Positions 18,976 through 61,875 are shown, counted from the stretch's first letter. The stretch is DNA of 64,000 bases from Dendrobates tinctorius (GCF_039654945.1 NW_027361770.1:36022001-36086000), one strand, 5' to 3'. Program-made: numbers and translations. The notes: generated by a model from the letters alone, not told the origin.

Positions 18976-19994
18976 TTGGGGGGTTCCACTGTTTAGGTAC
19001 ATCAGAGGGTCTCCAAACGTGACATTGTGCCACTAGTGGTGGGCGAGCACTAAAATGCTCGGGTGCTCGTCGCTCTGGTCGAGCATATTGGAATGCTCGG
19101 GTGCTTAACCTGAGCAACGAGCCCAATGTAGGTCTATGGGAAACTCAAGAATTTTTGCCTTGGGGGGGGGGGCAGGGGTGAGGGACTAGAAATTGCGGAA
19201 ATCGATGGGAACAGTGCTCAAATTACATGGGAACTTCATGGGGAAGACCCCTGGAAGCATTTCTGACTCCCAGGTCACTGCTTTGAACAATGTTGTCAGA
19301 GTCTTATGCCACTTTTACAGACTCACAATAAAACACAAAAGCGAATCCAAAATGGATTTTTCTTGGAAATAAGTTAAGGAACTTCCTTTGCAGGGTAATG
19401 ACTTGTATATAAGGCAAAATAAATAACCAAAAACAAAAATGCTCCTCCACACCTTGGGCTATGTTCACACGTAGTGTTTTTGAACTTTAGCACTGCTTTC
19501 AACCAAGACAAATGCATTCACTGGGAAATGTCATTTTAACATTTTACAACTTTATCTGGCCATGTGGTATGTGACACATAATCAGACACATCCTGTTTCA
19601 TTTAGGAAGGAGGAACTCTGAAAGTCACAATGCCTACTTTTATAGGGCTATCAGGCGGCCTTTACTATTCATCCATCAGCCGGCTATGCTTTGTTGTTCC
19701 CATTATTAAACAGTGGATATCCTATACTGTTATTGCCTATACAGTGAATGCAAGGCCTTGCCAAAATTTAGACGCACCCCAATAACCTTTTGAAGAGACG
19801 TACAGGAGGGCCACCTGAAAGCAATGTTCCTATTATTAGAAAGTTGGTACTCCCGTACTGTTTGATCTGCATTGAATGCAAGGCCTGCCCTGGCCAAAAT
19901 TTAGATGCACGACAACAACCCTTTGAAGAGACGTACAGGAGGGCCACCTGAAAGCAATGTTCACGTTTTTAGGAAGTGGGTCACTGTTTGCCTA

Positions 19995-20505
19995 TGCAGT
20001 GAATTGCAGTGTTGAGGCTGAAGAACCTTCAGTGGAGAATTGCAGTGTTGAGGCTGAAGAACCTGCAGTGTAGAATTGCAATCTTGAAGCTGAAGAACCT
20101 GCAGCTAATTGTAGTGCTGAGGCTGAAGAACCTGCAGAGGAGATTTGCAATGTTGAGGCTGAAGAACCTGCAGTGGAGAATTGCAATGTTGAGGCTGAAC
20201 AACCTGCAGTGAAATGCAGTGTTGAGGTTGACGAACCTGCAGTGGAGAATTGCAATGTTGAGGCTGAAGAACCTGCAGTGGAAAATTGTAGTGGAGAACC
20301 TGTAGTGTAAAATTGCAGTGTTGAGGCAGAATAACTTGCAGTGGAGAGTTGCAGTGTTGAGGCTGAAGAACCTGCAGTGGAGAATTTCAATGTTGAAGCT
20401 GAAGAAACTGCTGTGGAGAATTGCATTGTTGAAGCTGAACAACGTGCAATGGAGAACTGCATTGTTGAGGCTGAAGAATCTACCAAAGGAGAATTACAAT
20501 GTTGA
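19995..20505 (+). repeat. 36-bp minisatellite, about 14 units
   Basis: Unit GTTGAGGCTGAAGAACCTGCAGTGGAGAATTGCAAT; it explains the repetitive ORFs 19992, 20009, 20029 and 20318. Confidence 0.9.
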
Positions 20506-21560
20506 TGCTTTCCTGACGGTGTGCCAGATAAGAGGGCACAGGTACTGGCGCCATACTTGATGGAGGAACCCAAGCAAGCATACTATGATTTAGCTTTTCA
20601 GGACGCTAAAGAGTATGGCAAGTTAATAACAGAGATTCTTCCACGCTGGGGGGTAACAATGACTCTCTGGGTACAGCGAGTTCACTGTTGGGCATATCAC
20701 AGGGACAAACCACCGTGCTCCCAAATGTTTGACCTGTTGCACCTTGTCCAGAAGTGACTGCAGCTAGAGTCCTCTACGCCTGCGCAGATGGTAGAACGGG
20801 TGGTGATGGACCAGTTTATGTCATATCGGACACTGTTCGCACCAGGGTGTCCGGCAGACAGCGGTAATACCCCATCCTACCACATGGTTCTCAGCGGCGC
20901 TGGTTGGTCTTCTGATCCGGCTTGGATTGGGTTAACCAGGTTGTCATTCTGGCTGAGGGCTTAGCCACGCCCTCTGTCTTTAAATTGCCCTGTGTGACTA
21001 TGGGCGTCGCAGACTATAGCTCTTGCCTTGTGATAAGCGATACCGGTCTGGAGTGGTGGTCTAAGGAGCATACGGTTGCTGGTGTAGTGTATTCCATTGT
21101 TGCCATTTTGCCTTCCTGTGTTGTATTATTTGGTTGCCCTTGCACATTACTGTATTCTCCTGTGTGTATGCGGTGTGGTGCGTTTCCTTTATCCCTGTCC
21201 ATACTTATTTGTGGGGTCTGGTGTTTGGTCTCCTCACTGGGTGGAGGGTGGTGGGTTCAGCTTAGGGCTGGACAGGAGACAAGGACAGGGTGGAGGCCCA
21301 GGCAGGCACACCTTCAGTGTAAACCCTGGGTTGAGGGACAGACAGGGTTTCCCCTAGTCTGAGGGACACCGCAGGGGCCCCGGGGTTTCAGCCTAAAGTT
21401 ACCTAGGCTTCCCATGACAGTTTATGCCCGTACAGACTTGGGTTACCCAGGGTGATCCCCAGAAAGTCGATGAACTGGTCGAGAGATACCAGGGGATAGA
21501 AGGTTCCATGGGAAAGCAGCCCACCATACTAGGGGTCCCAACAGGGGGCAGAGGCCCAAA
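20500..21560 (+). pseudogene. Gmr1-type gag/SCAN fragment interrupted by a solo LTR
   Basis: VDAFLTV, VLAPYL..EPKQAYYDL, QMFDLLHLVQK and WVTQGDP...VERYQ; homologous to 10184-10600(-). Confidence 0.75.
20819..21419. mobile_element. Solo LTR
   Basis: TGTCAT...ATGACA termini with 5-bp TSD GTTTA. Confidence 0.85.
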
Positions 21561-22911: not shown

Positions 22912-23955
22912 GATACCCAATAATTATAAGGCACAGAGGAATCACGGAGGACATTGGTACGTCAGCAAGGTACTCCCTCAGCATCTTCCAAAACTTTGCA
23001 CTCCTTGTGAGAGTTTCCCGTGCCTCAGGGCCAAAGCGATGGGAGTCTCTGAGAAAACTCTCCCAGAACTTTGCCAATGTTCCTGTGCCTCTGCTGGATT
23101 GGAGTTGTGTCTCTCTCGCCTGTACTCCTTGGTTGTCCAACGAACTGTGATCTCTGCCGCCAGCGTTTTCAGATGGTAATTTTTTTAATAATTCCGCAAC
23201 AAGGGCCCTCTGGTACTGCCCCATTTTAGTGCAGTTTTTTCTGCAGCATGTCAATTCTTTTTGTGCTTCTGTCTCGTTTTGGCACCAATTGACTTCAATT
23301 GAGTCAGTGAAATCTGCAGCAAAAACGCAGGTATAAAAATGTTTGCGGATTTGCTGAGTTTTTATTTTGCGTTTTACTGTCTTTCTATGGTGTTTCCCAC
23401 GCTGTCATCTGTGTGACAGCGTGGGAAACACTGGCACGGTGGCTCTTATTGACGGTAAAGCTATTGCCAGTCAGAGCTCTGCGGGATCATGCTGGCAGAT
23501 GTCAGCATGACCCCGCAGCTGTGACTGTCACCTGCGGTAATGTGATCGCAGACTGTCGATCAGAGCGCTGCGGCATCATACTGTTTGATGTCAGCGTGAT
23601 CCCGCAGCTCACTGACCCACAGCAGTGACCTGCAGTAAAAAGCTGGGTTGGCCGATGAGACTACTGCTCCCATTGGGCTGTCTGCTGTCAGTGGTAACAG
23701 TTACAGCAGATGCAGCTGATGGGAGAAGTAGTATCATCTGCCGGTATCTGTTCTCACAGTTTAAAAAAATAAATAAAATTACATACATATTAAAATAAAA
23801 AACCTATTATACTCACCTCACACCAGATCCCCGATGCCTTCTTCTCTTGTAAAAAATGAAGAAAATAAATAAATAAAAAACAACATATACTCACCTGTAC
23901 ATCGTACTCCAGGTATTTTGAGTGTCCCACGGCAATCTCACCTGTAGAACAGTCA

Positions 23956-25537
23956 TGTGATGTACAATGTCTGTGAGGTATGGGGTTTTGTCTACAAAAT
24001 ATGATGTTTTCTGTTGTAACTTTCCAGAAAAATCCAGCCCTCTATGCCAATGCAGGCTGTCAGCTCATGCAGCACCTTCCCCCCTCCTCTTTTCGCCCAT
24101 GGCTCACTCACACACTGACCAGTGCCCCCCTGCCTGGGCTAGCTCTGAAACCTTAAACCAACTTCCTCTCGAAGAGCAGGGGGAAGGGATCCCTTTGTTC
24201 GGAAAAACACAGGCTGTATGCCGGTATATGGGAAGCATAAAAGTCATATTACGAAAACCATACCCAGTAGAGATATGAAAATCATATTTTTGTAACCTGA
24301 GCGGTCCCAGCTTCGATACCGTGTCTCTTTCGAAGTTCCACCCTGCCCAGAACATGAGATATGATTTGCGCCCAAATGGACGGTCATATCGCATAGATGT
24401 TTGATGTTTTCTTGATGGGCTCATTACGCTGGGAAACATGATACCACTGATGAGTCCATACCAGCTTCTCCCATAAAGTTATAGCTAATCTAAGTTTTGT
24501 AGCCAAAACATAACTTGGATAAGAGAGGTGGGATCAACCCAGAATGCACCTCTCCGTGATGTCACATAGGAAAGTCTATAAGGCATTTCCTGGGCAAACC
24601 AGGTCAGAACAGCTGCAGAGTCGGTGCTGACAAGAACTCCAGATGAATGGAGACGTGTGGCTCCTCCCCCCTTAAAGCCGCATGGTCTGCCTAAGGAACA
24701 ATATGGAACTGTGAGTGTAATCTCTTTGTTTTCTCCACTTTTATTTTATACCTGTACTGTACATATTTTATGTCTCAATTTTATAGCAACTTTTATCTGT
24801 AATCACTGTCCTCTTTCGGAAAATAAATGAAATTATTTAGATCTGTCTCCATGCTCTAAGAATCGAACTATACGCCTTTGATAGATAATCGCTACTAATT
24901 CAAGGGGTTTGCCACGGACCCTCTTAATTTAACACTGTGAATTAAGTAACCGTGACTGGTGGCAGCGCGTTGTGTACGGCTATTACGGCTTGCTGGCAGT
25001 CTAGAAGGGTCTTATATTGCTGAGTAAGGGGCTTCAGCCACAGCATTGATAATTCCCTTACTGCAGAAGCCTAATTGCCGGTTCACAACAGGCAGCCCGT
25101 CCGGCGACTAATTATCCTAGGTGCAGTTCCCTGACTGACCTGAGGGTAAGGGGGGCGCCGGAGAGCTGCGAGTTCCAAAGTGGAACTGAGAAAGTGGGAT
25201 ATACATAAATCCCCACAGTACTTGGAAGATTGATAGCAGTGGTGGGGCATCCAAATTAAACTCCCCCTGCGGCAAATTGTAGAGCGAGATTAGCTTGCTG
25301 GATATTTTTGTCACATGGTGCCAGTGGTGGGATAACTAAGATAAGCCCCACTGCGCCTGTGATAGCCGTGTGCCGGCATTGTGTCACGTCCCTCCGTCCG
25401 CTGATACACCGGTGTCAGTGGTGGGATCGTGACATAGTGGTGACACAGGGTCCGCTGTCCGTCGAGTTTTGGTGGCAGCGGGACTCCCGTTAGTCGTCGC
25501 CCGTAAGTGGACGAACGGCCGTGGGCTGTTCGTCACA
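23956..25537 (+). repeat. 5' LTR (1582 bp)
   Basis: TGTGATGTAC...CGTCACA; TATAA-like motif at ~24576 and AATAAA at ~24822. Confidence 0.95.
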
Positions 25538-25540
25538 TAT

Positions 25541-25560
25541 TGGTGGCAGCGCGGTGGGAT
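25541..25560 (+). promoter_or_regulatory. Primer-binding site, tRNA-Leu-like
   Basis: TGGTGGCAGCGCGGTGGGAT, 3 nt after the LTR. It equals the complement of the vertebrate tRNA-Leu 3' end (TGGTGGCAGCGGTGGGAT) with a 2-nt insertion. Confidence 0.85.
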
Positions 25561-25756
25561 AATCCTAGAGCATTAGTGATTTGGTTTGAGCAATCATTCC
25601 TCTCACTAAAGACCTGCACGGTTCCTGCGGGAATCCTGCATCATAGGTTTTGGAGAACAGACTCAGTGGTTACTAGTCCTGAGACATTAGTGTGTACTTG
25701 CAAGTATCCCCCTCCCGTTTCTTCGTTTTTCTTTTTCTCTCTTTTATTTGGCAACC

Positions 25757-28700
25757 ATGGCGGCGATGACAGTGGAGTGGTATCAGAAGCAGAAAAAGGA
25801 CACCCTTGCTGGGTTATGCACGTACCGAGGCATAGACGCCGCAGGCGGAACCAAAGATCGAATGATCGCGGCTCTAGTGCAGCTGGACAACGACCAGAAT
25901 CCAGCGAGCGCAGAAGTTGGCCCAAGTTGCCATGGGGCTGCAGCAGAGGCTCCACTCCTGAGCGCTGGCCCCACATTCAACCAGAACGGGGTGGACCCCT
26001 ATCTGCAAATGGCCTTGGACGAACTCCCCGCCGAAGACAGGGATGGGCGGGTGAGGCTGATCCAGCAATATCGGCAGGAGGCCCAAGCCGAACGTGAGCG
26101 CCATGCAGAAGCTCAGAGGGCCCATGAGCTGGAGATGCTCCAGCGGGGGTGGAATGCCCCCACAGCCCGAAGCCGTGAGCCCAGCAGCGTCCAGACTCCT
26201 AAACCCCGGCCAGAGCATTTTCCCGTGATGGAAAAGGATGGGGACTTGGACACGTTCCTGCGAGCCTTTGAGAAAGCCTGCAGACAGTACCAGCTGCCTA
26301 GAGACCAATGGGCAAGGTACTTGACCCCAGGGCTAAAAGGCAAAGCCCTGGAGGCATTTGCTTCTCTTCCGCCAGAAGCCGATGACGACTATGACGCCAT
26401 AAAGCAGGCGCTGATCGCCAAATACCGGCTGACACCTGAGGTATACCGAAAGAAGTTCCGACACCTCCAACGTGGCCCACACGATAGCTACAGTGATGTG
26501 GTGCAAGGACTCAGGACCCACTTTGACCAGTGGATCCATGGACTGTCCGTTGAAACCTTTGAGCAGCTACGGGACCTGATGATCAAAGACCAGTTCCTGC
26601 ATCTCTGCCCAGCTGAGGTCCGACAGTTCATCCTGGACCGCGAACCAACGAACGCGGACAAAGCGGCGCAGATCGCCGACAACCACGAGGCCAACCGGAA
26701 GCCCGAGACGCGGAGGCCAGTCACCACCAGCTGGAAAGGGGGTAAGCCAGCAACCAACCCCAATGCCCCAGCTGGCTGTCCCTCCGGAGGCCCTGTCCCT
26801 GTTGCCAACAACAGGCCGGCTACTGACAGTCGCCTGTGTCACCACTGCCAGCGGCCTGGTCACTTCTCTTACACCTGTCCGAATAGGCCGAAGAACCCCC
26901 CAGCCAAGGCCCCCGGGCCCAACGCCTCTGTTCTTTTGGTGGGAGGTGTGGTTGGGAGGGCTGACGACAACGTTCAACCTGTTCAGGTGGGGGCCCGTCT
27001 TGCTACAGGCCTCAAGGACACCGGGGCTGAACGAACCCTCATCCGTCCTGGACTGGCGGCCCCTGAAGAGTTTGTTGAGGGGAAAACCCTGACTGTCACC
27101 GGGATTGGAGGCACCCGTTGTCCCTTGCCAGTGGCACGAGTTTTTCTTGACTGGGGTGCCGGGAGCGGGTTGAGGGAGGTGGGAGTGTCTGAAAATTTGC
27201 CCACTGATGTTTTATTGGGGACGGACTTGGGGAGGATGGTTGCATACTATGTCCCTGACACCCTTCCCCAAACTGATAATAAGGGTAACGTTAACCCTGA
27301 TGATGTTGATGATGGGAAACTGAATGTGTTACCTGCTAATGCCTTGATGAGTAATGATGCAACTAACAACCATTCTTTCCCCAGGTACGATGCTGATGCT
27401 GATGTGAATGTACCAAAGCAAACTGATAACCATTCTTTTCCTAGGAATGTTGATGTATCTGTGCCGACTGAACCCGTTAACCCTTTCTTTGAAGCGGTAG
27501 ATGTGTCCACAGGTACCGAAGTGCTCAGCCCCGTCACTCTGCGGAGTGAGACGGCTGAGGAACCCCTGGCAGGAGTAAGCAACGGTGCTCAAGGAAATGG
27601 GGAGGTGCATGGGGACCATGAGGAAGGTAATGCCATGCAGCTGACCAGTGCCACCGAGGAAGGTAACTGGCCCATAAGTAGCACTGCTCCTGAAGTGTTG
27701 GGGGTGGATGGGGAGGTAGAGCCCAGGGCAGCACCAGCTGGTGGGTCTGTAGAAATCCCCAGGGAGACAGCATACATAGCAGCTGTCACACGCAGTCAGA
27801 GTGCCCAGATCGCAGGTAACGCACTGTCTTCTGGACCCTCTGCTGCTACAGGAGAGACTGAACCAGAGGTGAACCCAGAGCCGGTTCCAGAGGGTCCCAG
27901 TAAAGAGGGGACCCTGACGTCCCTTCTGGCAGCCTCCAGCATGGAGTTCCAGGCTGCTCTGCACTCAGATGCCAGCCTGGAGAAATTGAGAGGTCTCGCC
28001 GAGACGCCCACCTCCAAGTCTGATAAGGAGAGGGTGTTCTGGGAACGAGGAAGGTTGTACCGGGAGACAGTACCCGGAGATCCTAAAAAGGAGTGGTTGA
28101 GGGAAAGACAGCTGGTCGTCCCCTATCAGTTCAGAACTGAGTTGTTGCGGATTGCCCATGAGATTCCACTCGCTGGACACTTGGGGATCAGCAAAACAAA
28201 GGCACGGCTGTCTCAACACTTCTATTGGCCCAAGATGGGGACAGATGTAACACACTACTGCCGCTCCTGTGCCACCTGTCAAAAAGTGGGTAAGGCGGGG
28301 CCTGCTCTTAAGGCTCCCCTTATTCCTTTGCCGGTGATAGAGGAGCCTTTCCAGAGAATCGCGGTGGACATTGTAGGACCGCTGTCCGTCCCCAGCAGCT
28401 CCGGAAAGCGATACATTCTCACCGTGGTAGACTACGCTACCCGGTACCCAGAGGCAGTAGCTCTGTCTTCAACCAGGGCAGATAAGGTGGCTGACGCACT
28501 GGTGACCATCTTTTCGAGAGTAGGATTTCCCAGGGAGATGCTTACCGATCAAGGGCCCCAATTCATGTCTCGCCTAATGGAGGCTCTCTGTGAGAAAATG
28601 CAGGTGACGCAGCTGGTATCGAGTCCGTATCACCCACAGACTAACGGTTTGTGTGAACGTTTCAACGGTACCCTCAAACAGATGCTCCGCATACTGGTTG

Positions 28701-30733
28701 AGACCCAAGGGCGCGACTGGGAGCGGTACCTCCCACACCTGCTGTTCGCTTACAGAGAAGTTCCGCAGGCCTCGACCGGGTTCTCCCCCTTCGAGCTCCT
28801 GTATGGCAGGCGAGTCCGGGGACCCCTTGGGTTGATAAGAGAATCCTGGGAAGATGAGCCAAACCCCACAGAAGTGTCCATCGTGGATTATGTCATGCGC
28901 TTCCGTGACAAGATGCAGACCTTGACACAGTTGGTGCATGACAACATGACGCAGGCTCAGGCTGACCAGAAGCACTGGTACGACCAGAACGCCCGGGAGC
29001 GGACCTACCAGGTGGGTCAAAAGGTGTGGGCGCTGGTCCCTGTACCAACGGATAAGCTTCAGGCAGCCTGGGAAGGCCCGTACGTCGTCCACCAACAGCT
29101 CAACCCGGTCACCTACGTGGTCACGCTTGACCATGCTCGGGGTAGGCGCAAGGCCTTTCACGTCAACATGCTGAAGGCGCACTACGAACGTGAAGCTTGC
29201 GTCCTACCGGTCTGCAATCTGCCAGAGGATGGGGAGGAAGATTCCCTCCTGGACATGCTGGCCCAGGCCAAGGCCAATGGGTCCATTGAGGACATGGAGA
29301 TAAGTGGTTCGCTCACCGTGTCCCAGCGGTTGCAGTTGATGGCCACCCTGGAACTCTTCCGGCCCGTGTTCACCAACCGTCCTGGGAGGACGGAGTTAGC
29401 GGTTCATGAGGTGGACACCGGGAATCATGCCCCATTACGGCGAACACCTTATCGGATCTCTGAAACGGTGCAACAAGTCATGCGCCGAGAGGTCGATGAG
29501 ATGTTAAGGCTGGGAGTGATTCGACGGTCAAAAGGTGCGTGGGCTTCACCTGTAGTCCTCGTGCCTAAAAAGGATCGAACCACCCGGTTCTGCGTGGACT
29601 ACAGGGGGCTTAACGCCATCACAACCTCTGATGCCCACCCAATGCCGCGCATCGAGGATCTGCTCGATCGGTTGACAAACGCCAACTACATATCCATCAT
29701 GGATTTGAGTCGGGGATACTGGCAGATTCCCCTGAGCCCTGAGGCGCAGGAGAAATCCGCCTTTACCTTTGGACTGTACGAGTCCACGGTCATGCCCTTC
29801 GGCATGAAGAATGCCCCTGCCACTTTCCAGCGGATGGTCAACCACCTGCTTTGGGGACTGGAGGAGTACGCAGTGGCGTACTTAGACGATATTGCCGTCT
29901 TCAGTTCCACCTGGGAGGAACACCTTCAGCACCTCCAGGAGGTGCTCAAGCGTCTTCACCAGGCAGGCCTGACCATCAAGCCGGGGAAGTGCCAGATAGG
30001 CATGCGCGAGGTCCACTACCTGGGGCACCGGGTAGGCGGGGGTTCCATGAGTCCGGAGCCAGAAAAAGTGGACGCAATCGTGTCCTGGCCCACCCCCAGG
30101 ACCAAGAAACAGGTGAAGTCCTTCTTGGGCACTGCAGGGTACTATAGGCGGTTCGTACAGGACTATAGCGCCCTTGCCAAACCCTTGACTGACCTCACCA
30201 AGCAGAGGCTACCCCAAACAGTCAACTGGACAGATGACTGTGAGGCGGCTTTCCAAGCTTTGAAAGCAGCCCTGTGCAACTCTCCAGTGTTGAGAGCAGT
30301 CGACAGCAGTCGCCCGTTTCTGGTACAGACCGACGCCAGCGAGTTTGGCCTCGGTGCTGTGCTTAGCCAGGTCGACTCGGGGGACCAAGAGCACCCCGTG
30401 TTGTACCTGAGCCGGAAACTTTTGCCGAGGGAAGTGGCATACTCGACCATCGAGAAGGAGTGTCTGGCCATGGTGTGGGCACTGCAGCGTTTGCAGCCCT
30501 ACCTGTATGGGCGCGCCTTCACGGTGGTAACCGACCACAACCCTCTGAGCTGGTTGCACACAGTGTCCGGAACCAATGGAAGGTTGCTCCGCTGGAGCCT
30601 TGCCCTTCAACAGTACGACTTCACTGTAAAACACAGGAAGGGCAGCGAAAACGGCAATGCCGATGGGTTGTCCCGCCGGGGCGAACCCGCTGGGGTGCGC
30701 ATGGCCGAATACCGAGAGGTAATGCCTCCTTAG
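25757..30733 (+). CDS. Gag-Pol polyprotein, 1658 aa: SCAN-type capsid, CCHC knuckle, aspartic protease, integrase, RT, RNase H
   Basis: Kozak-context ACCATGG start. Motifs in order: YRKKFR...DQFL (SCAN-like), CHHCQRPGHFSYTC, LKDTGA, H..HLG...CRSCATC, DIVGP/TDQG/ERFN, WEGPY, VDYRGLN, YLDD, QTDAS...EKECLA...TDH...NADGLSR. Confidence 0.95.
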   Translation: MAAMTVEWYQKQKKDTLAGLCTYRGIDAAGGTKDRMIAALVQLDNDQNPASAEVGPSCHGAAAEAPLLSAGPTFNQNGVDPYLQMALDELPAEDRDGRVRLIQQYRQEAQAERERHAEAQRAHELEMLQRGWNAPTARSREPSSVQTPKPRPEHFPVMEKDGDLDTFLRAFEKACRQYQLPRDQWARYLTPGLKGKALEAFASLPPEADDDYDAIKQALIAKYRLTPEVYRKKFRHLQRGPHDSYSDVVQGLRTHFDQWIHGLSVETFEQLRDLMIKDQFLHLCPAEVRQFILDREPTNADKAAQIADNHEANRKPETRRPVTTSWKGGKPATNPNAPAGCPSGGPVPVANNRPATDSRLCHHCQRPGHFSYTCPNRPKNPPAKAPGPNASVLLVGGVVGRADDNVQPVQVGARLATGLKDTGAERTLIRPGLAAPEEFVEGKTLTVTGIGGTRCPLPVARVFLDWGAGSGLREVGVSENLPTDVLLGTDLGRMVAYYVPDTLPQTDNKGNVNPDDVDDGKLNVLPANALMSNDATNNHSFPRYDADADVNVPKQTDNHSFPRNVDVSVPTEPVNPFFEAVDVSTGTEVLSPVTLRSETAEEPLAGVSNGAQGNGEVHGDHEEGNAMQLTSATEEGNWPISSTAPEVLGVDGEVEPRAAPAGGSVEIPRETAYIAAVTRSQSAQIAGNALSSGPSAATGETEPEVNPEPVPEGPSKEGTLTSLLAASSMEFQAALHSDASLEKLRGLAETPTSKSDKERVFWERGRLYRETVPGDPKKEWLRERQLVVPYQFRTELLRIAHEIPLAGHLGISKTKARLSQHFYWPKMGTDVTHYCRSCATCQKVGKAGPALKAPLIPLPVIEEPFQRIAVDIVGPLSVPSSSGKRYILTVVDYATRYPEAVALSSTRADKVADALVTIFSRVGFPREMLTDQGPQFMSRLMEALCEKMQVTQLVSSPYHPQTNGLCERFNGTLKQMLRILVETQGRDWERYLPHLLFAYREVPQASTGFSPFELLYGRRVRGPLGLIRESWEDEPNPTEVSIVDYVMRFRDKMQTLTQLVHDNMTQAQADQKHWYDQNARERTYQVGQKVWALVPVPTDKLQAAWEGPYVVHQQLNPVTYVVTLDHARGRRKAFHVNMLKAHYEREACVLPVCNLPEDGEEDSLLDMLAQAKANGSIEDMEISGSLTVSQRLQLMATLELFRPVFTNRPGRTELAVHEVDTGNHAPLRRTPYRISETVQQVMRREVDEMLRLGVIRRSKGAWASPVVLVPKKDRTTRFCVDYRGLNAITTSDAHPMPRIEDLLDRLTNANYISIMDLSRGYWQIPLSPEAQEKSAFTFGLYESTVMPFGMKNAPATFQRMVNHLLWGLEEYAVAYLDDIAVFSSTWEEHLQHLQEVLKRLHQAGLTIKPGKCQIGMREVHYLGHRVGGGSMSPEPEKVDAIVSWPTPRTKKQVKSFLGTAGYYRRFVQDYSALAKPLTDLTKQRLPQTVNWTDDCEAAFQALKAALCNSPVLRAVDSSRPFLVQTDASEFGLGAVLSQVDSGDQEHPVLYLSRKLLPREVAYSTIEKECLAMVWALQRLQPYLYGRAFTVVTDHNPLSWLHTVSGTNGRLLRWSLALQQYDFTVKHRKGSENGNADGLSRRGEPAGVRMAEYREVMPP

Positions 30734-30742
30734 CACCCTCTT

Positions 30743-30753
30743 AAGGGGGGAGG
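30743..30753 (+). promoter_or_regulatory. Polypurine tract
   Basis: AAGGGGGGAGG immediately before the 3' LTR. Confidence 0.9.
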
Positions 30754-32335
30754 TGTGATGTACAATGTCTGTGAGGTATGGGGTTTTGTCTACAAAATAT
30801 GATGTTTTCTGTTGTAACTTTCCAGAAAAATCCAGCCCTCTATGCCAATGCAGGCTGTCAGCTCATGCAGCACCTTCCCCCCTCCTCTTTTCGCCCATGG
30901 CTCACTCACACACTGACCAGTGCCCCCCTGCCTGGGCTAGCTCTGAAACCTTAAACCAACTTCCTCTCGAAGAGCAGGGGGAAGGGATCCCTTTGTTCGG
31001 AAAAACACAGGCTGTATGCCGGTATATGGGAAGCATAAAAGTCATATTACGAAAACCATACCCAGTAGAGATATGAAAATCATATTTTTGTAACCTGAGC
31101 GGTCCCAGCTTCGATACCGTGTCTCTTTCGAAGTTCCACCCTGCCCAGAACATGAGATATGATTTGCGCCCAAATGGACGGTCATATCGCATAGATGTTT
31201 GATGTTTTCTTGATGGGCTCATTACGCTGGGAAACATGATACCACTGATGAGTCCATACCAGCTTCTCCCATAAAGTTATAGCTAATCTAAGTTTTGTAG
31301 CCAAAACATAACTTGGATAAGAGAGGTGGGATCAACCCAGAATGCACCTCTCCGTGATGTCACATAGGAAAGTCTATAAGGCATTTCCTGGGCAAACCAG
31401 GTCAGAACAGCTGCAGAGTCGGTGCTGACAAGAACTCCAGATGAATGGAGACGTGTGGCTCCTCCCCCCTTAAAGCCGCATGGTCTGCCTAAGGAACAAT
31501 ATGGAACTGTGAGTGTAATCTCTTTGTTTTCTCCACTTTTATTTTATACCTGTACTGTACATATTTTATGTCTCAATTTTATAGCAACTTTTATCTGTAA
31601 TCACTGTCCTCTTTCGGAAAATAAATGAAATTATTTAGATCTGTCTCCATGCTCTAAGAATCGAACTATACGCCTTTGATAGATAATCGCTACTAATTCA
31701 AGGGGTTTGCCACGGACCCTCTTAATTTAACACTGTGAATTAAGTAACCGTGACTGGTGGCAGCGCGTTGTGTACGGCTATTACGGCTTGCTGGCAGTCT
31801 AGAAGGGTCTTATATTGCTGAGTAAGGGGCTTCAGCCACAGCATTGATAATTCCCTTACTGCAGAAGCCTAATTGCCGGTTCACAACAGGCAGCCCGTCC
31901 GGCGACTAATTATCCTAGGTGCAGTTCCCTGACTGACCTGAGGGTAAGGGGGGCGCCGGAGAGCTGCGAGTTCCAAAGTGGAACTGAGAAAGTGGGATAT
32001 ACATAAATCCCCACAGTACTTGGAAGATTGATAGCAGTGGTGGGGCATCCAAATTAAACTCCCCCTGCGGCAAATTGTAGAGCGAGATTAGCTTGCTGGA
32101 TATTTTTGTCACATGGTGCCAGTGGTGGGATAACTAAGATAAGCCCCACTGCGCCTGTGATAGCCGTGTGCCGGCATTGTGTCACGTCCCTCCGTCCGCT
32201 GATACACCGGTGTCAGTGGTGGGATCGTGACATAGTGGTGACACAGGGTCCGCTGTCCGTCGAGTTTTGGTGGCAGCGGGACTCCCGTTAGTCGTCGCCC
32301 GTAAGTGGACGAACGGCCGTGGGCTGTTCGTCACA
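30754..32335 (+). repeat. 3' LTR (1582 bp)
   Basis: Copy of 23956-25537 followed by TSD GTCA. Confidence 0.95.
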
Positions 32336-33505
32336 GTCACATCGGGATATGACCGCTCTACTGCTGTATCACCGCTGCTGGTGATACACTGACAGGAGGT
32401 AATCGCTCCCACAGTGTATCACTGAGCTGCCGTGAGAGTTCACCGGAGTTCATCAGCTGATCAGCTCCGGTGCTATCACGGCACTGCTGCATGAGAACTT
32501 TCCCGCCCAGCAGTAGTGCCGTAAGGGAGATCACCGGAGCTGATCAGCTGATAATCTCTGGTGACGTCTCACGGCAGCTTAGTGATACACTGCGGGAGCG
32601 ATTACTTGCTGTAAAGTGTATCGCTGGCTGTCTTTGAGAGCAGTTAAATCACTGATATAACTGCTCTCAAAATGATCAGGATCGTCGTGGGACATTATGG
32701 AGTATATTCTCTGTGGAGAGGTGAGGAATTCTGTGGTTTATTTTATTTTTGTTGCAGGAGATGTTGGCGTCAGTGGATTAAGCGTTCGGTGAGTATGGTT
32801 TAATTAAGATTATTAAAGTAGTCTGTGTCATTATGTCAAATAAAGGACTTTATTTTGGGTGTCTGTGGGGAATTCCCTTGCTCGTACTTCTAAGCTGGAG
32901 CTCCCTCTGGTGGTTACTGGGAGTAGTGGAGCTGGGTAGTCTGATGGAAGTTTGCCACCTGACGATGATGATTGGGAATCTGGAATTACTGGCTGCGAAA
33001 ATCTAAGTGAGCAGGCTTCCGTTAGTTGTTGCCGGTGATTTCCTCCTTTTGCATTTTGAGCTCCTCAGTCTCCTGCCTGATCTGCATGGTTCAGTTAAGT
33101 GATTATTTTGCTAATCCTTTGCATCTAATCTGGTTGTGCCTTTTTTTTTGCTTTCTGCTTTGTTATGAGGGTTCAGCGTACTCCCTGCTGGGGGCAGCGC
33201 TGGGCCCCACTCCATATGTTACAGCTTGTGCCAGTTTGTTCAGTCCCCTGTTATATTAGTATCTTTTGCTTTGCTTCCAGTTCACACCAGAGTGCTGATC
33301 TAGCAGGGGTGAGGTCGTGTGGCCTCAGTTTTTTATATATCAGATGTGTTGGATTTTTCAGGGTTTTTGCTCAAAGAGGAGATCCCAAAAGGGAAAAAAA
33401 AAACCACCTGGTTCCCGCGCTGCTATACTTCAACCCTCAAATGGAGGAAATCCAGTCGATTCTAGGAGTAGGTTCCAATATCAATGCTTTATTCCATGGT
33501 GCAAA

Positions 33506-39882: not shown

Positions 39883-40021
39883 CAAGAAAATGGCGGCGGT
39901 GAGCGCAGGCGCCAATTCCGGTGCTACAACACGCCCAGAACAGGACAGCGCTGGACACAGGGAAGAAAGGTGAGTATAAATGTTTTTTTTTTTTTGTGTG
40001 TTTGCAGTTTAATAGGGGTGA

Positions 40022-40395
40022 GGGGACCATGCATACCAGGATAGGGGGGTGAGGGGACCATGCATACCAGGATAAGGGGGTTGAGGGGACCATGCATACC
40101 AGGATAAGGGGGTTGAGGGGACCATGCATACCAGGATAAGGGGGTTGAGGGGACCATGCATACCAGGATAAGGGGGTTGAGGGGACCATGCATACCAGGA
40201 TAAGGGGGTTGAGGGGACCATGCATACCAGGATAAGGGGGTTGAGGGGACCATGCATACCAGGATAAGGGGGTTGAGGGGACCATGCATACCAGGATAAG
40301 GGGGTTGAGGAGACCTTGCATACCAGGATAAGGGGGTTGAGGAGACCATGCATACCAGGATAGGGATGAGGGGTGCAGCACATAACCAGGATGGG
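40022..40395 (+). repeat. 32-bp minisatellite (about 11 units) in a Helitron-like element ending at 40452
   Basis: Unit GGGGACCATGCATACCAGGATAAGGGGGTTGA; downstream imperfect hairpin (40425-40441) and CTAG|T terminus. Confidence 0.85.
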
Positions 40396-40967
40396 AGACT
40401 ATATACCAATAAAAATGCCTGCCACCCAGGCGTAGAACGGGTTCATAGCTAGTGTGTGTATGTATGTGTATATATATTATATATTTTAGCTGAAGAGCCC
40501 GGCGTTTCCTGGGCATAGTAACCAACTGTGGTTAGTTATAACAAATTCTAATGATTATATTGCACATAAAAAACGTGCATCTAATCCTATTCTGTGTGAT
40601 ACTGTCTGCTGAGCCGTGTATCTATTCCTATCCTGTGTGATACTGTCTGCTGAGCCGTGTATCTATTCCTATCCTGTGTGATACTGACTGCTGAACTGTG
40701 TATCTAATCCTATCCTGCAGGGCTGTGGAGTCGGTAAGCCAAACCTGCGAATCCAACTCCTCAATTTCCCTTACACCAACTCCGACATATATTGGTTATA
40801 TTTAAGTGAAAAAATTATTGTAGTACAATGTGAACAACAGACATTTAATACTTTCTATGATCCAATAATCAAGATATTTATAACATAATATCTATTTATT
40901 GGAACACAACTTTAGAACACAAAAAACTGTAATAAATTGTAAATATGTAATACACTGTATACATGTA

Positions 40968-45641: not shown

Positions 45642-47056
45642 AGGGAATCTGTCACCCCATTTTTGGTCTATAAGATGCGGCCACAGTCATCAGGGGCTTA
45701 TCTACAGCATATTGTAATGCTGTAGATAAGCCCCCGATGTAACATGAAAGATAAGAAAAACAAGTTAGATTAAACTCACCCGGGGGTCCGGTCGGGTCCG
45801 ATGGGTGTCGCGGTCCGGTCCAGCGCCTCCCATCTTCTAGCGATGACATCCTCCTTCTTACTTCTGCTGCGGCTGCTGCGCAGGTGTACTTTATCTGCCC
45901 TGTTGAGGGCAGGGTAAAGTGTTGTGAGTTCATTTTCCCCTTCGTCACTGAGGTCTGGTGAACTCCCTATTCTGGTAAAGGAAGGTAATGAGCCTGATTA
46001 TCAGGCACCTGAGACTAATGAGGATGACTGGCTGAGTGGAGTCACTGACTGGATATAAGGCTGCCGATGCCCTTCTGCCCTGCGGGTGATTTCTCTGTGG
46101 ACTTCTAGGACACCAGTCTGATTCCTGCTTCCCTAAAGCTAAGTTTTCTGCTTTGTCTGTTTGCATTTATGTTTTGTTTTTGTTTTCCTTGCTTTTCTGG
46201 ATTCTGCCATTCCCTGCTGGGATGAGCTGAATCTCCTTTTGCCGGTTGCTCTGTCTTCAGAATATTCCTGAGTACTGACACAGCTTTTTTGAAGCCTAGC
46301 GTCTTCAGGGCCTTTTTCACTGTCAGTCTGTTGGCTCTTACTTTCATAGGGTTTTTCACGGATTGCAGACAGCAGCCTTCCTGTCCTTTCCTATCTAGGT
46401 AGTTTGGGCCCCGTCTTTGCTCAGTCTATCTTTCTGTCTGTGTTAGTGTTTTCATCTTGCTTCACCGTCATTATATGTTGGGGGCTGCCTATTGCTTTGG
46501 GGTCTGCTCTGGGGCAGTTTAGTTTTCCCCTTTCTTTCTTTAGGCCTATTTAATTCTCCAGCTGTGATCGAGGGGTCTAGGGCATCGTAGGAACCCCCCA
46601 CGGCTACTGTTAGTTGTTGTGATAGGATCAGGGGTCTGCAATCCGATAGCTGCCAACCTCTCTGGTTTTCTGGACTTAGCTAGCAGTTCTGTTTTTGCCT
46701 CCTACGGTGACTCAATCATAACAGTAAAGTACTGCAGTGTGCAGGCGCCGGACCTCTCTGACCTTTCCCTGCGCACTGCAGTACTTTACTCTGCCTTCAA
46801 TAGGGCAGATATAGTACACCTGCGCCGGAACCATGGCAGAAGTAAGGAGGAGGACATCATCTCAAGAAGATGGGAGGTGCCTGACCAGACCGCGACACCC
46901 ACCGGACCATGCCCCCCAGTGAGTATAATCTAACTCGCTTTTCTTATCTTTCAGGTTACATCGAGGGCTTACCTACAGCATTACAGAATGCTGTAGATAA
47001 GCCCCGGATGGCTGTGGCCGCATCTTATAGGCCAAAAATGGGGTGACAGATTCCCT
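45642..47056. mobile_element. Kolobok/T2-type palindromic MITE with TTAA TSD
   Basis: TTAA-AGGGAATCTGTCACC...GGTGACAGATTCCCT-TTAA; the arms are mutually inverted. Confidence 0.85.
45920..46723. mobile_element. Solo LTR with 6-bp TSD
   Basis: TGTTGTGAG...CATAACA termini, GTAAAG on both sides. Confidence 0.9.
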
Positions 47057-53106: not shown

Positions 53107-53928
53107 TGTTGTGAGTTCATTTTTCCCTTCATCATTGAGATCTGATGAACTCCCTCCTCTGGTGAAGGAAGATAGTGAGACTGATTACCAAACACCTGGG
53201 CAGCTAGATGATAACTGGGTGGCTGGAATTGAGGACTGGATATAAGGCTGCCGACGCCCTTCTTCCTGGATGGTGATTTTCCTGCTGGATTCTTGGAGAC
53301 CAGTCTGATTCCTGCGTCTCAAAGCTAAGTTTTTCTGCTCTGCTTTGTACTCTTCAGTTTTGTTTTTGTTTTGCCTTGTTTTTTGGGAGTCCTGCCATCC
53401 CCGGCCGGGGGTGAGCTGAATTCCATTTTTGTCTCTGATCTGTTGATCTTTTGCTCTGTCTTCAGCATATACCTGAGTGCTGATATAGTCTTTTGAAGCC
53501 TAGCGACTTCAGGGCCAGTTTTTCCTATCAGTCGGTTGGCTCATTTTGATAGGGTTTTTGCGGATGGCAGACAGCAGCTTTCCTATCCTGTCCTATGTAG
53601 TTAGCTTGGGCCCCATCATTTGCTCAACCTATCTTTCTATCTGTGTTAGTGTTTTCATCTTGCTTCACCATCATTATATGTTTGGGGCTGCCTATTGCTT
53701 TGGGGTCTGCTCTGGGGCAGTTTAGTTTTTCCCCTTTCTGTCTTTAGGCTATGTAGCTCTCCGGCTGTGATCGAGGGGTCTAGGGCACCGTAGGAACCCC
53801 CCCACGGCTACTGCTAGTTGTTGTGGATAGGTTCAGGGGTCTGCAATCCGATAGCTGCCAACCTCTCTGGTTTTTCTGGACTTAGCTGGTATTTTTGTTT
53901 TTTCCTCCTTCGGTGACTCATCATAACA
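53107..53928. mobile_element. Solo LTR with 6-bp TSD (family of 45920-46723)
   Basis: TGTTGTGAG...CATAACA termini, CTCCGC on both sides. Confidence 0.9.
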
Positions 53929-60258: not shown

Positions 60259-61875
60259 CCGTATATACTCGCGTATAAGCCAAGATTTTCAGCCCATTTT
60301 TTTGGGCTGAAAGTCCCCCTCTCGGCTTATACGTGAGTCATATAGCCTGGGGGAGGGGGAGCGGGGGTGTCAGATCATACTGGCCCCCCCCTGCTTGTCC
60401 CATGGTCTCCCTTCCTTCCTACATCGGTCACATGGTACCGCTCATTAAACTCTATTACTTTAATGAGCAGTACCACGTGACCGCTGAAGGGAGAAACGGG
60501 GCTGTAGAGACGCACCAGGGGAAGGTAAGTATATGCTATATTCACCTGTCCCGGTTCCAACGCTGCTCGCCGCTGTCTGCCCGCTGGGTCCTTCTGTCAG
60601 TGACGTTCAGACAGCAGAGGGGCGCGATGATGTAGTCAGCAGTGTATGCCCTCTGCCTGACGTCACTGACAGAGGGACCTGGTGAGCAGCGTTGGAACCC
60701 CGGGACAGGTGAATATCTCAGGTGCTGGGTCCTGAGCCAGCGGCGACACCTGTCCCCTATAGCGCGCCGGTGTCCGCCTGCTCAGCACACCGGCACCTGG
60801 CCCCCAGTGACAAGAGGTGAGTATGTCTTTTTCAATTTTTTTCCTTTTTTTTTTTTTTTTTTTTTTTATACCTGCAGTAGCGGCAGCAGCAATATATGGG
60901 GGCATATTCAATGGAGCATCTTATGGGGGCAGCATATGGGGGTATATTCAATGGAAGCATCTTATGGGGGCAGCATATGGGGGATATTTAATGGAGCATC
61001 TTATGGGGGAAGCATATGGTTGCATATTCAATGGAGCATCTTATGGGGGCATATTCAATGGAGCATCTTATGGGGGCATATTCAATGGAGCATCTTATGG
61101 GGGCATATTCAATGGAGCATCTTATGTGGGGGCAGCATATGGGGGTATATTCAGTGGAGCATCTTATGGGGGCAGCATATGGGGGTATATTCAATGGAGC
61201 ATCTTATGGGGACAGCATATGGGGGTATATTCAATGGAGCATCTTATGGGGGCAGCATATGGGGTTATATTCAATGGAGCATCTTATGGTGGTAGCATAT
61301 GGGGGGATATTCAATGGTGCATCTTATGGGGGCATATTCAATGAAGCATCTTATGGGGGCAGCATATGGGGGCATATTCTATGGAGCATTTTATGGGGCA
61401 GCATATTGGGCATATTCAATGGAACATCTTATGGGGCATTATCTATGGAGCATCTTATGGGGGCCTATTCTATGGAACATTTTATGGTGCAGCATATGGG
61501 GCATATTCAATGGAACATTTTATGGTGCAGCATATGGGGCATAATCTATGGAACGTCTTATGGGGCATATTATTCTATGAAGCATCTTATGGGGCCATTA
61601 TTAACCTTTGTACAGCATCTTATGGGGCCCATCATGAACTGTATGGAGCATTATATGGGGCTCCTGATTCAATATGGCTATAAAACATTTAACCTACTGA
61701 TGTCTCAATTAATTTTACTTTTATTGGTATCTATTTTTATTTTTGAAATTTACCAGTAGCTGCTGCATTTTCCACCCTAGGCTTATACGCGAGTCAATAA
61801 GTTTTCCCAGTTTTTTGTGGCAAAATTAAGGGGGTCGGCTTATACACGGGTCGGCTTATACACAAGTATATACTG
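60259..61875. mobile_element. Tc1/pogo-type non-autonomous element with internal minisatellite
   Basis: TA-CCGTATATACTCG...AGTATATACTG-TA; ATATTCAATGGAGCATCTTATGGGGG(CAGCATATGGGGG) array at ~60890-61680. Confidence 0.8.

What the first reader, a model, noticed from the sequence alone, without database searches (positions are those of the whole stretch)
24840..25560. LTR U5 is a ~700-nt chain of hairpins carrying repeated tRNA-Leu PBS-like and anti-PBS motifs
Seen: downstream of the LTR AATAAA, PBS-like motifs recur at 24957 (TGGTGGCAGCGCG, identical to the first 13 nt of the real PBS), 25231 (TGATAGCAGTGGTGGG), 25316 (TGGTGCCAGTGGTGGGAT, preceded by an LTR-end-like GTCACA), 25410 (CGGTGTCAGTGGTGGGAT) and 25470 (TGGTGGCAGCGG). 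The last three pair with local complements (CCCCACTG, CGCTGATAC, CCGCTGTCC). They sit among further hairpins: TTAATTTA/TGAATTAA, GTAAGGG/CCCTTAC, TAATTGCCGG/CCGGCG..AATTA, GTTCCA/TGGAAC, GTGGGAT/ATCCCCAC, GTCACG.TCCC/GGGAT.CGTGAC and GACGAACGGCC/GGCTGTTCGTC. The true PBS has a 2-nt bulge. Known: the PBS binds the primer tRNA and is the target of 3' tRNA fragments. Inference: these could be decoys for tRNA fragments, a structural switch gating priming, an IRES/shunt for a ~1.1-kb leader, or fossils of stepwise LTR growth by shifting the priming site.
Basis: partly seen in the sequence, partly recalled or inferred. Interest (0 to 1): 0.75.

Follow-up and report, generated by a model that had tools for sequence, protein, structure and literature searches.

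The report
Fossil primer sites inside frog retrotransposon LTR
The long repeat at each end of a young frog Gmr1-type retrotransposon holds a row of old copies of its own "end of repeat plus tRNA-Leu primer site" junction, so the repeat probably grew stepwise; a few of these copies are conserved enough to be in use today.

Summary
The element is an intact Gmr1-like Ty3/gypsy retrotransposon. Its LTRs (23956-25537 and 30754-32335, 1582 nt) are 100% identical, and integrase lies before RT.

- **Motifs are not chance.** Every quoted motif and hairpin arm sits at the stated coordinate. U5 has 4 tRNA-Leu PBS-like motifs at edit distance 4 or less, against 0.08 in shuffles (0 of 200).
- **Structure.** The U5 RNA folds far better than shuffles (z = -6.9).
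- **Junction copies.** Three motifs (25307, 25427, 25454) also carry the LTR-terminus sequence. They are copies of the whole junction, not just of the tRNA complement.
- **Old and young parts.** Units b and c are tandem paralogues in Dendrobates and Ranitomeya elements. Units d, e and f (25392-25525) are missing from one subfamily and vary in number between genomic copies.
- **Signs of present use.** A TGGTGGCAG half-site lies in U5 of all eight frog Gmr1 elements with paired LTRs (one G-to-A change in an unpaired ninth). The unit-c hairpin loop is invariant.
- **IRES or shunt disfavoured.** The 905 nt before the gag AUG hold 1 ATG against 15 expected.
- **Covariation is weak.**

The scan reached the same reading before on another copy in this genome (s1-382839).

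The parts
23952..23955 (+). Target-site duplication GTCA (5' copy). The 3' copy is at 32336-32339.
   Evidence: Flanks printed.
23956..25537 (+). 5' LTR, 1582 nt, TGTGA...TCACA, 100% identical to the 3' LTR.
   Evidence: blastn self-comparison; repeat family D5.
24577..24582 (+). TATAAG, a candidate TATA box (TATAAA in other genomic copies). This is inferred. An alternative transcription start close to 24845 is not excluded.
   Evidence: Sequence; loose end at 24569; ATG-free zone starts at 24852.
24822..24827 (+). The only AATAAA in the LTR, taken as the poly(A) signal that defines the start of U5 at about 24845.
   Evidence: Conserved in D. tinctorius copies L007c and L010, but not at the aligned position in Ranitomeya.
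24890..24897 (+). Box A, CGCTACT(A). It is conserved 39-102 nt upstream of the TGGTGGCAG box in dendrobatid and ranid elements. It is complementary to the 5' acceptor strand of tRNA-Leu(AAG).
   Evidence: tRNA probe sequences in PMC6103689. Pairing in cis with motif a is predicted only in the window copy.
24957..24969 (+). Motif a, TGGTGGCAGCGCG, identical to the first 13 nt of the true PBS. Its 9-nt core is in U5 of all eight frog Gmr1 elements with paired LTRs; the unpaired L010 copy reads TAGTGGCAG.
25085..25216 (+). Conserved structured core of U5. It is 80-95% identical to the D. tinctorius subfamily L010 and 70-90% identical to Ranitomeya. The helices 25092-25109/25153-25169 and 25112-25128/25133-25149 are kept.
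   Evidence: This segment also has the highest depth in genomic contigs.
25231..25272 (+). Unit b: a degenerate PBS-like arm (TGATAGCAGTGGTGGGG) with its local complement. It is a paralogue of unit c.
25309..25364 (+). Unit c hairpin: GTCACA plus TGGTGCCAGTGGTGGGAT (25316-25333), a loop, and CCCCACTG. The stretch GGGATAACTAAGATAAGCCCC is invariant in all six aligned copies.
25398..25427 (+). Unit d: a hairpin with arms CGCTGATAC and GTGTCAG, carrying CGGTGTCAGTGGTGGGAT (25410-25427). It is absent from L010 and from Ranitomeya. Most genomic copies read C at 25411.
25428..25451 (+). Unit e: CGTGACA-TAG-TGGTGACACAGGG, a copy of the LTR end, spacer and start of the PBS.
   Evidence: score 26; present in Ranitomeya.
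25452..25483 (+). Unit f: CCGCTGTCC paired with TGGTGGCAGCGG (25470-25481). The stretch 25454-25480 is 81% identical over 27 nt to the true junction.
   Evidence: (score 34).
25496..25547 (+). Terminal 22-bp hairpin that covers the LTR end and the first 7 nt of the true PBS.
   Evidence: 22 of 22 pairs kept in L007b.
25541..25560 (+). True PBS: the 18-nt complement of the tRNA-Leu(AAG) 3' end with a 2-nt CG insertion after position 9. It lies 3 nt after the LTR.
25561..25756 (+). Leader. It is ATG-free, 85-100% identical across dendrobatid elements, and holds a TAGAGCATTAGTG box shared with distant frogs.
25757..30733 (+). Single gag-pol ORF of 1658 aa: SCAN-like capsid, integrase, then RT and RNase H (Gmr1 domain order).
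30743..30753 (+). Polypurine tract AAGGGGGGAGG.
30754..32335 (+). 3' LTR. It carries the same ladder of motifs at an offset of +6798.

Best explanation
U5 of this LTR is a composite that records its own growth.

**Anatomy.** A short ancestral U5 (about 24845-24956) ends in an old tRNA-Leu primer site, of which only the 5' half survives (motif a). Everything downstream to 25537 is former leader sequence plus repeated copies of the 'LTR terminus + spacer + PBS' junction (units b to f).

**Mechanism.** The order of events is inferred, but its logic follows from how LTRs are made.
1. A segment spanning the U5/PBS border is duplicated in tandem. Reverse-transcriptase template switching between repeats would do this.
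2. tRNA-Leu primes at the downstream copy.
3. The upstream copy is then copied into minus-strand strong-stop DNA, and so into both LTRs.
4. Internal copies are no longer rewritten from the tRNA each cycle, so they decay. Most now sit in local hairpins, which would also keep them from acting as false priming sites.

**Young and old parts.** Units d, e and f are young and still vary in number between copies. Motif a, the structured core and the unit-c hairpin are old and conserved, so they have probably been put to use. Likely uses are tRNA-Leu binding or RNA structure for packaging or priming; which one is not shown.

**Translation.** The whole U5 plus leader behaves as a scanned 5' UTR.
For: **The motifs are copies of the junction.**
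- Aligning the true junction (25525-25575) to U5 gives hits at 24957 (score 28), 25307 (32), 25427 (26) and 25454 (34). The best score in shuffles averages 19.5, with a 95th percentile of 26.
- The hits at 25307, 25427 and 25454 include the LTR-terminus sequence.
- Unit c also shares about 11 of the first 13 bases (from GGGAT, the PBS 3' end, into the leader) with the true junction as read in Ranitomeya L008.

**Tandem origin.** Unit b matches unit c at 26 of 35 positions in the window, 28 of 30 in L010 and 18 of 21 in Ranitomeya.

**Gain and loss of units.**
- 25392-25525 is absent from D. tinctorius subfamily L010 and only partly present in R. imitator L008.
- Rare genomic contigs skip 25369>25526, 25478>25528 and 25213>25322, or repeat 25311-25355.

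**Why a priming shift is required.** The ladder lies in both LTRs, which are 100% identical. That can only happen if priming took place downstream of it.

**Conservation.**
- TGGTGGCAG occurs in U5 on the element's sense strand (reverse strand only in the inverted L007 fragment) of all eight frog elements with paired LTRs, and otherwise only at perfect PBSs and three stray sites (window 22799, window 51789 on the minus strand, L005 11926). About 0.05 per locus per strand is expected. The LTRs cannot be aligned between genera.
- Identity peaks at 24960-79, 25100-25219 and 25320-79.

**Scanned UTR.** 1 ATG against 15.2 expected in 905 nt, 0 of 2000 shuffles. ATG is also depleted in the other frog elements.

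**tRNA identity.** The 18-mer equals the published tRNA-Leu(AAG) 3' probe. CAGTGGTGGGAT equals the Leu(UAG) probe (PMC6103689).
Against: - Motif a has no 3' half and no clear LTR-terminus homology, so calling it an 'ancestral PBS' is an inference from its position.
- Its retention in every lineage fits present function better than a passive fossil.
- No outgroup element with a short U5 could be fetched to test the ancestral state.
- The C-to-T change that makes units b to d look like Leu(UAG) could simply be CpG decay.
- Covariation is weak. Changed pairs that stay canonical are 0.40 against a null of 0.33 in L010 (p 0.12), 0.46 against 0.33 in Ranitomeya (p 0.0085), and show no excess among near-identical copies.
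- The strong hairpins of the young ladder could be by-products of inverted duplication.
- The borders of R and U5 are not mapped.
- Only about three independent dendrobatid lineages were available.
Confidence: 0.6

Rival explanations
1. The motifs form a working multi-site platform for tRNA-Leu or its 3' fragments. Extra sites would capture or hand over the primer tRNA to a deliberately imperfect PBS, or would soak up inhibitory 3' tRFs.
For: - The TGGTGGCAG half-site stays a perfect match to the tRNA 3' end in every lineage with paired LTRs, even where the element's own PBS is bulged or mutated.
- Box A, complementary to the tRNA 5' acceptor strand, is conserved in ranid and dendrobatid elements.
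- Units b to d keep the GGTGGGA match to the tRF-3a seed.
- The 18-nt Leu 3' fragment is a documented tRF in mammals.
Against: - Units d, e and f are lineage-specific and vary in copy number.
- Most motifs are buried in hairpins.
- Motifs keep either the 5' half or the 3' half, rarely both.
- A decoy on the same RNA adds AGO or tRF target sites instead of removing them.
- No small-RNA or binding data exist for frogs.
Confidence: 0.2
2. U5 is mainly a selected RNA structure, such as a packaging or dimerisation signal or a switch that exposes or hides the PBS. On this reading the likeness to the PBS is incidental to stem formation.
For: - z = -6.85.
- The core helices and the unit-c hairpin are kept in L010 and Ranitomeya, with some two-sided changes.
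- Retention of changed pairs in Ranitomeya is 0.46 against 0.33, p 0.0085.
- The true PBS is half-buried in a 22-bp hairpin.
Against: - It does not explain why the arms match tRNA-Leu and carry LTR-terminus homology.
- There is no excess of pair-preserving changes among near copies or in L010.
- Other frog U5 regions are only modestly structured, with z from 0 to -3 in most.
- No Rfam family matches.
Confidence: 0.25
3. The hairpin chain is an IRES or a ribosome-shunt device for a very long leader.
For: The leader is long (about 0.9-1.15 kb) and very stable (-301 kcal/mol). Short uORFs end at 24857, at the foot of a long-range helix.
Against: ATG is depleted about 15-fold across the 905 nt that would be bypassed. 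That is the signature of scanning. Leaders that are shunted or entered internally tolerate AUGs.
Confidence: 0.05
4. The motifs are chance matches in a GC-rich stretch.
For: None beyond the weak motifs b (edit distance 5) and e (6). These are within the range of shuffles when taken singly.
Against: 0 of 200 shuffles reach the observed counts. The motifs are conserved in other species.
Confidence: 0.01

Closest known systems
Gmr1-like Ty3/gypsy LTR retrotransposons (Metaviridae) of vertebrates
   Same: It has LTRs, a 4-bp TSD, a tRNA PBS and a PPT. Integrase lies upstream of RT and RNase H, and the capsid C-terminus is SCAN-like. The link between SCAN and the Gmr1 gag is described in PMC4592553.
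   Different: The LTR is very long (1582 nt), with a U5 of about 690 nt that holds internal copies of its own PBS junction. I found no paper describing this.
Extended primer-tRNA contacts: HIV-1 primer activation signal, RSV U5-TpsiC pairing, Ty1 boxes 0/1/2.1, Ty3 bipartite PBS (from my own knowledge)
   Same: Short conserved sequences in U5, outside the PBS, are complementary to the primer tRNA.
   Different: Here the conserved box repeats the complement of the tRNA 3' end itself. A second box matches the 5' acceptor strand, not the T or D arms. No binding has been shown.
[quoted passage not shown]
   Same: The working PBS is imperfect in young, probably active copies. The imperfection is inherited across lineages.
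   Different: Here the imperfection is a 1-3-nt insertion (a bulge) rather than substitutions. It is accompanied by a perfect half-site upstream in U5.
Deletion and duplication of direct repeats by reverse-transcriptase template switching in retroviruses (from my own knowledge)
   Same: Ladder units are gained and lost between copies.
   Different: The repeat unit includes the priming site, so a duplication followed by downstream priming lengthens the LTR itself.
Ribosome-shunt leaders of pararetroviruses such as CaMV 35S (from my own knowledge)
   Same: A long, highly structured leader follows short uORFs.
   Different: The structured part is almost free of AUG. Shunted leaders are not.

Membership tests
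Gmr1-like Ty3/gypsy retrotransposon | Integrase domain upstream of RT and RNase H in pol | tested here: met
   Pfam: Integrase_H2C2 and rve at residues 791-980, RVT_1 at 1272-1429, RNase H at 1494-1623.
Gmr1-like Ty3/gypsy retrotransposon | Gag capsid C-terminus homologous to the SCAN domain | tested here: met
   PF02023 SCAN at residues 230-317, E = 2.9e-11. The link is described in PMC4592553.
Gmr1-like Ty3/gypsy retrotransposon | LTR pair with TG..CA ends, TSD, PBS next to the 5' LTR and PPT next to the 3' LTR | tested here: met
Gmr1-like Ty3/gypsy retrotransposon | Placement within the Gmr1 clade in an RT/IN phylogeny | not tested
   Only nearest homologues were listed: frog elements at 41-67% identity with the same domain order.
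tRNA-Leu-primed retroelement | PBS complementary to the 3'-terminal 18 nt of tRNA-Leu, 0-5 nt from the LTR | tested here: met
   18 of 18 positions match, with a 2-nt insertion, 3 nt after the LTR. The 18-mer equals the published Leu(AAG) 3' probe. A frog tRNA-Leu gene could not be checked, because none lies in the window or the loci.
Extended primer-tRNA binding element (PAS / Ty1-box type) | Conserved U5 sequence complementary to a part of the primer tRNA other than the part bound by the PBS | tested here: inconclusive
   Box A (CGCTACT) is complementary to nt 1-7 of tRNA-Leu(AAG) and is conserved in 5 of 9 LTRs from two frog clades. It is absent from Xenopus, Dendropsophus and Phyllobates.
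Extended primer-tRNA binding element (PAS / Ty1-box type) | Demonstrated binding or an effect on initiation of reverse transcription | not testable with these tools
   This needs biochemistry.
3'-tRF target site | Complementarity to a 3' tRF, including its seed | tested here: met
   Units c and d match the 18-mer with 2-3 mismatches and keep GGTGGGA. Motifs a and f lack the seed part.
3'-tRF target site | The tRF exists in the host and represses the target | not testable with these tools
   No small-RNA data. The runs found were contigs only.
Ribosome-shunt or IRES leader | Bypassed region tolerant of AUGs; initiation independent of scanning | tested here: not met
   1 ATG against 15.2 expected in 905 nt; the most depleted trinucleotide.
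Known Rfam RNA family | Covariance-model match | tested here: not met
   Nothing relevant at E of 1 or less in 23956-25900.

The most novel reading that the evidence does not exclude
Frog Gmr1 elements carry a conserved two-box module in U5: CGCTACT, complementary to the 5' acceptor strand of tRNA-Leu, and TGGTGGCAGCG, complementary to its 3' acceptor strand plus ACCA. The module would capture tRNA-Leu by invading both strands of the acceptor stem and then hand the tRNA to a deliberately bulged PBS. The bulge would let the element escape silencing directed at the PBS (by tRFs or zinc-finger proteins), and the perfect upstream half-site would make up for the weaker priming. This would be a new kind of primer-loading element.
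Probability: 0.12. Interest if true: 0.8.

Novelty: new variant of a known kind. Interest (0 to 1): 0.5.

Why it matters
LTR length is usually treated as a passive trait. Here the sequence shows a mechanism by which U5, and so the LTR, can lengthen in steps: duplicate the junction, then prime from the downstream copy. The ladder it leaves behind can be read like a fossil record.

The data also point to two possible new cis elements of reverse transcription in a vertebrate gypsy lineage that is young and very abundant in poison-frog genomes. One is a second tRNA-Leu half-site, conserved across frogs. The other is a bulged PBS that has been stably inherited. These give a natural system for the trade-off between priming and PBS-directed silencing that has been proposed for mouse ERVs.

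Tried and rejected
- **Cross-genus LTR alignment** (Xenopus, Dendropsophus, Lithobates, Rana against the window). Only the LTR end, PBS and leader align, so covariation across genera was not possible.
- **Metagenome scan** for the invariant 21-mer of unit c: no hit.
- **tRNA genes.** None in the window or in the ten loci. tRNA-Leu identity therefore rests on published human probe sequences and on the perfect 18-mer PBS in Dendropsophus.
- **'Anti-PBS' arms as tRNA-sense copies.** Not enriched; rejected.
- **Cis stem between Box A and motif a.** Proposed by alifold, but pair probability is 0.88 only in the window, 0.11 in L010 and 0 in Ranitomeya, Lithobates and Rana. It is not a conserved helix.
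- **A common hairpin context for motif a across frogs.** None seen.
- **Strong U5 structure as a family trait.** Mixed: z ranges from 0 to -7.
- **Read laying.** All four runs were contigs, so no RNA starts, ends or poly(A) tails could be read.
- **The second, older LTR element in the window as a control.** Too decayed; no clear PBS.
- **Literature searches** for natural second or duplicated PBS found nothing relevant. Searches failed on term syntax.
- A fuzzy-regex scan missed known motifs. It was replaced by an edit-distance scan.
- The look-up of encoding contigs returned no DNA for two proteins whose gene range was too long.

Full report
**What the element is**

The finding lies in the 5' LTR of a complete LTR retrotransposon.
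- A self-comparison gives two 1582-nt LTRs, 23956-25537 and 30754-32335, that are 100% identical.
- They have TGTGA...TCACA ends and a 4-bp target duplication, GTCA.
- The polypurine tract AAGGGGGGAGG abuts the 3' LTR, and a primer-binding site starts 3 nt after the 5' LTR.
- One ORF of 1658 aa (25757-30733) carries a SCAN-like capsid, then integrase, then RT and RNase H. That is the Gmr1 domain order.
- The nearest proteins are frog elements. The gag part is closest to poison-frog sequences, and copies in Dendrobates tinctorius are 91-97% identical in DNA. The host is therefore a dendrobatid frog.
- I compared copies only.

**Check of the observation**

Every quoted motif and hairpin arm is at its stated place.

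Identity of the tRNA:
- The 18-nt complement of the tRNA-Leu(AAG) 3' end is the PBS of the Dendropsophus relative, without any change.
- It also equals a published probe for human tRNA-Leu(AAG) (PMC6103689).
- The window's PBS is that 18-mer with CG inserted after position 9.

Motif counts in U5, with the true PBS left out:

| Edit distance | Observed | Dinucleotide shuffles |
|---|---|---|
| 3 or less | 2 | 0.00 |
| 4 or less | 4 | 0.08 |
| 5 or less | 5 | 0.53 |

No shuffle of 200 reaches the observed counts.

Structure:
- The U5 RNA folds at -301 kcal/mol, z = -6.85.
- The signal sits in 24916-25155 and 25276-25635.
- The 'anti-PBS' arms are short local complements, not tRNA-sense copies.

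**What the motifs are**

I aligned the true junction (LTR end, spacer, PBS and start of leader; 25525-25575) to U5. It finds 24957, 25307, 25427 and 25454 with scores 28, 32, 26 and 34. The best score in shuffles averages 19.5.
- Three of these hits include the LTR-terminus sequence.
- Unit c also continues past the PBS-like part into homology with the start of the leader.
- The motifs are therefore copies of the whole junction, not independent tRNA-like insertions.

Units b and c are tandem paralogues with an 85-nt period. They match at 26 of 35 positions in the window, 28 of 30 in the D. tinctorius subfamily L010, and 18 of 21 in Ranitomeya imitator L008. That duplication is old.

The stretch 25392-25525, which holds units d, e and f, behaves differently.
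- It is missing from L010 and only partly present in Ranitomeya.
- Rare genomic contigs skip or repeat individual units.
- This part is young and still changes in unit number.

The ladder lies in both LTRs. U5 is by definition whatever lies upstream of the site where the tRNA primes. A junction copy can therefore only enter the LTR if priming moved to a copy further downstream. That step is a deduction; the order of events is inferred.

**Signs of present function**

LTRs of Xenopus, Dendropsophus, Lithobates and Rana elements cannot be aligned with the window outside the LTR end, PBS and leader. Even so, several features are shared or conserved.
- **The TGGTGGCAG half-site.** Each of the eight elements with paired LTRs has TGGTGGCAG in U5, on the sense strand, 118-581 nt before the LTR end. 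L010, a decayed copy with no paired 3' LTR, reads TAGTGGCAG. The 9-mer occurs almost nowhere else in the loci: only at perfect PBSs and at three stray sites (window 22799, window 51789 on the minus strand, L005 11926), against about 0.05 expected per strand.
- **It tracks the tRNA, not the PBS.** The half-site stays perfect even where the element's own PBS is bulged or mutated.
- **Box A.** CGCTACT lies 39-102 nt upstream of the half-site in dendrobatid and ranid elements. It is complementary to the 5' acceptor strand of tRNA-Leu(AAG).
- **Box A and motif a do not form a conserved stem.** Pairing between them is predicted only in the window copy, so a conserved stem does not explain Box A.
- **Dendrobatid conservation.** Within dendrobatids, identity peaks at motif a, at a structured core (25100-25219) and at the unit-c hairpin. 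The loop and 3' arm of that hairpin are invariant.
- **Helices.** Some helices keep pairing through changes on both sides.
- **Overall covariation is weak.** Changed pairs stay canonical at 0.40 against 0.33 (p 0.12) in L010 and at 0.46 against 0.33 (p 0.0085) in Ranitomeya. Near-identical copies show no excess.
- No Rfam family matches.

**Translation**

The 905 nt from 24852 to the gag AUG hold one ATG against 15.2 expected.
- No shuffle of 2000 goes that low, and ATG is the most depleted of all 64 trinucleotides.
- Other frog elements show a milder depletion.
- This is the mark of a scanned 5' UTR and argues against an IRES or a shunt.
- The ATG-free zone starts about 30 nt after the AATAAA. 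That leaves open that transcription starts near 24845 with a very short R, rather than at the TATAAG box near 24577.
- Reads could not settle this, because all runs were contigs.

**The bulged PBS**

All dendrobatid elements carry a 1-2-nt insertion at the same place in the PBS. Ranid and Xenopus elements carry insertions after position 3. Only Dendropsophus has a perfect PBS.

Several of these elements have LTRs that are 99-100% identical, so the imperfect site works and is inherited. [quoted passage not shown] Zinc-finger proteins that target a Gmr1 PBS have been predicted in lizards (PMC4592553).

**Verdict**

- The best reading is stepwise growth of the LTR by junction duplication and a downstream shift of priming (confidence 0.6). 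A few old units have since been conserved for a function that is not yet known.
- The scan reached the same reading on another copy (s1-382839). I tested it independently here.

Noticed in passing
window 25541-25560; L007:4680, L010:4304, L008:4295, L009:4316, L001:3784, L003:3780, L004:3765, L005:3446: The working PBS carries an insertion (bulge) in nearly all frog Gmr1 elements. Dendrobatids have it at one position and ranids and Xenopus at another; only Dendropsophus is perfect. It persists in elements with 99-100% identical LTRs, although each replication cycle should be able to rewrite the PBS from the tRNA.
   Followed up: partly
window 24852-25756: Only one ATG in the 905 nt before the gag AUG (15 expected). 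The ATG-free zone starts about 30 nt after the AATAAA. R may therefore be very short, with the AATAAA region doubling as the core promoter.
   Followed up: partly
window 23956-25800: Summed contig depth in a genomic run is 50-300 times higher over the U5 core (25072-25195, 25320-25443) than over the 5' part of U3. The U5 core seems to be shared by many more copies or subfamilies than this element's U3. A second, related organism shows the same profile.
   Followed up: no
L007:3632-4676 (Dendrobates tinctorius): A partial U5 in reverse orientation abuts a 5'-truncated LTR head to head at 4312/4313. This is a rearranged copy of the same family.
   Followed up: no
L004:3423-3472 versus L005: The Rana element lacks, through a deletion of about 29 nt, the first of the two TGGTGGCAG boxes of the Lithobates element, but keeps the second. 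At least one box is always retained in the elements with paired LTRs.
   Followed up: partly
window 45920-46723 and 53107-53928: A second, older LTR retroelement lies on the minus strand. Its LTRs are 84% identical, its ORFs are broken, and no clear PBS lies next to the LTR.
   Followed up: partly
window 19959-20516, 39979-40426, 40534-40758/44163-44469, 60899-61492: Several tandem-repeat arrays with periods of about 36, 32, 41 and 13-27 nt. They are unrelated to the finding.
   Followed up: no
window 25060-25219: In the hairpin with arms TAATTGCCGG and CCGGCGACTAATTA, one G-C pair is replaced by A-U in Ranitomeya. This reading was made by eye from the alignment. The alifold fold pairs these bases differently. 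Its best-supported domain is the core 25092-25169, where 15 of 15 window pairs are kept in Ranitomeya.
   Followed up: partly
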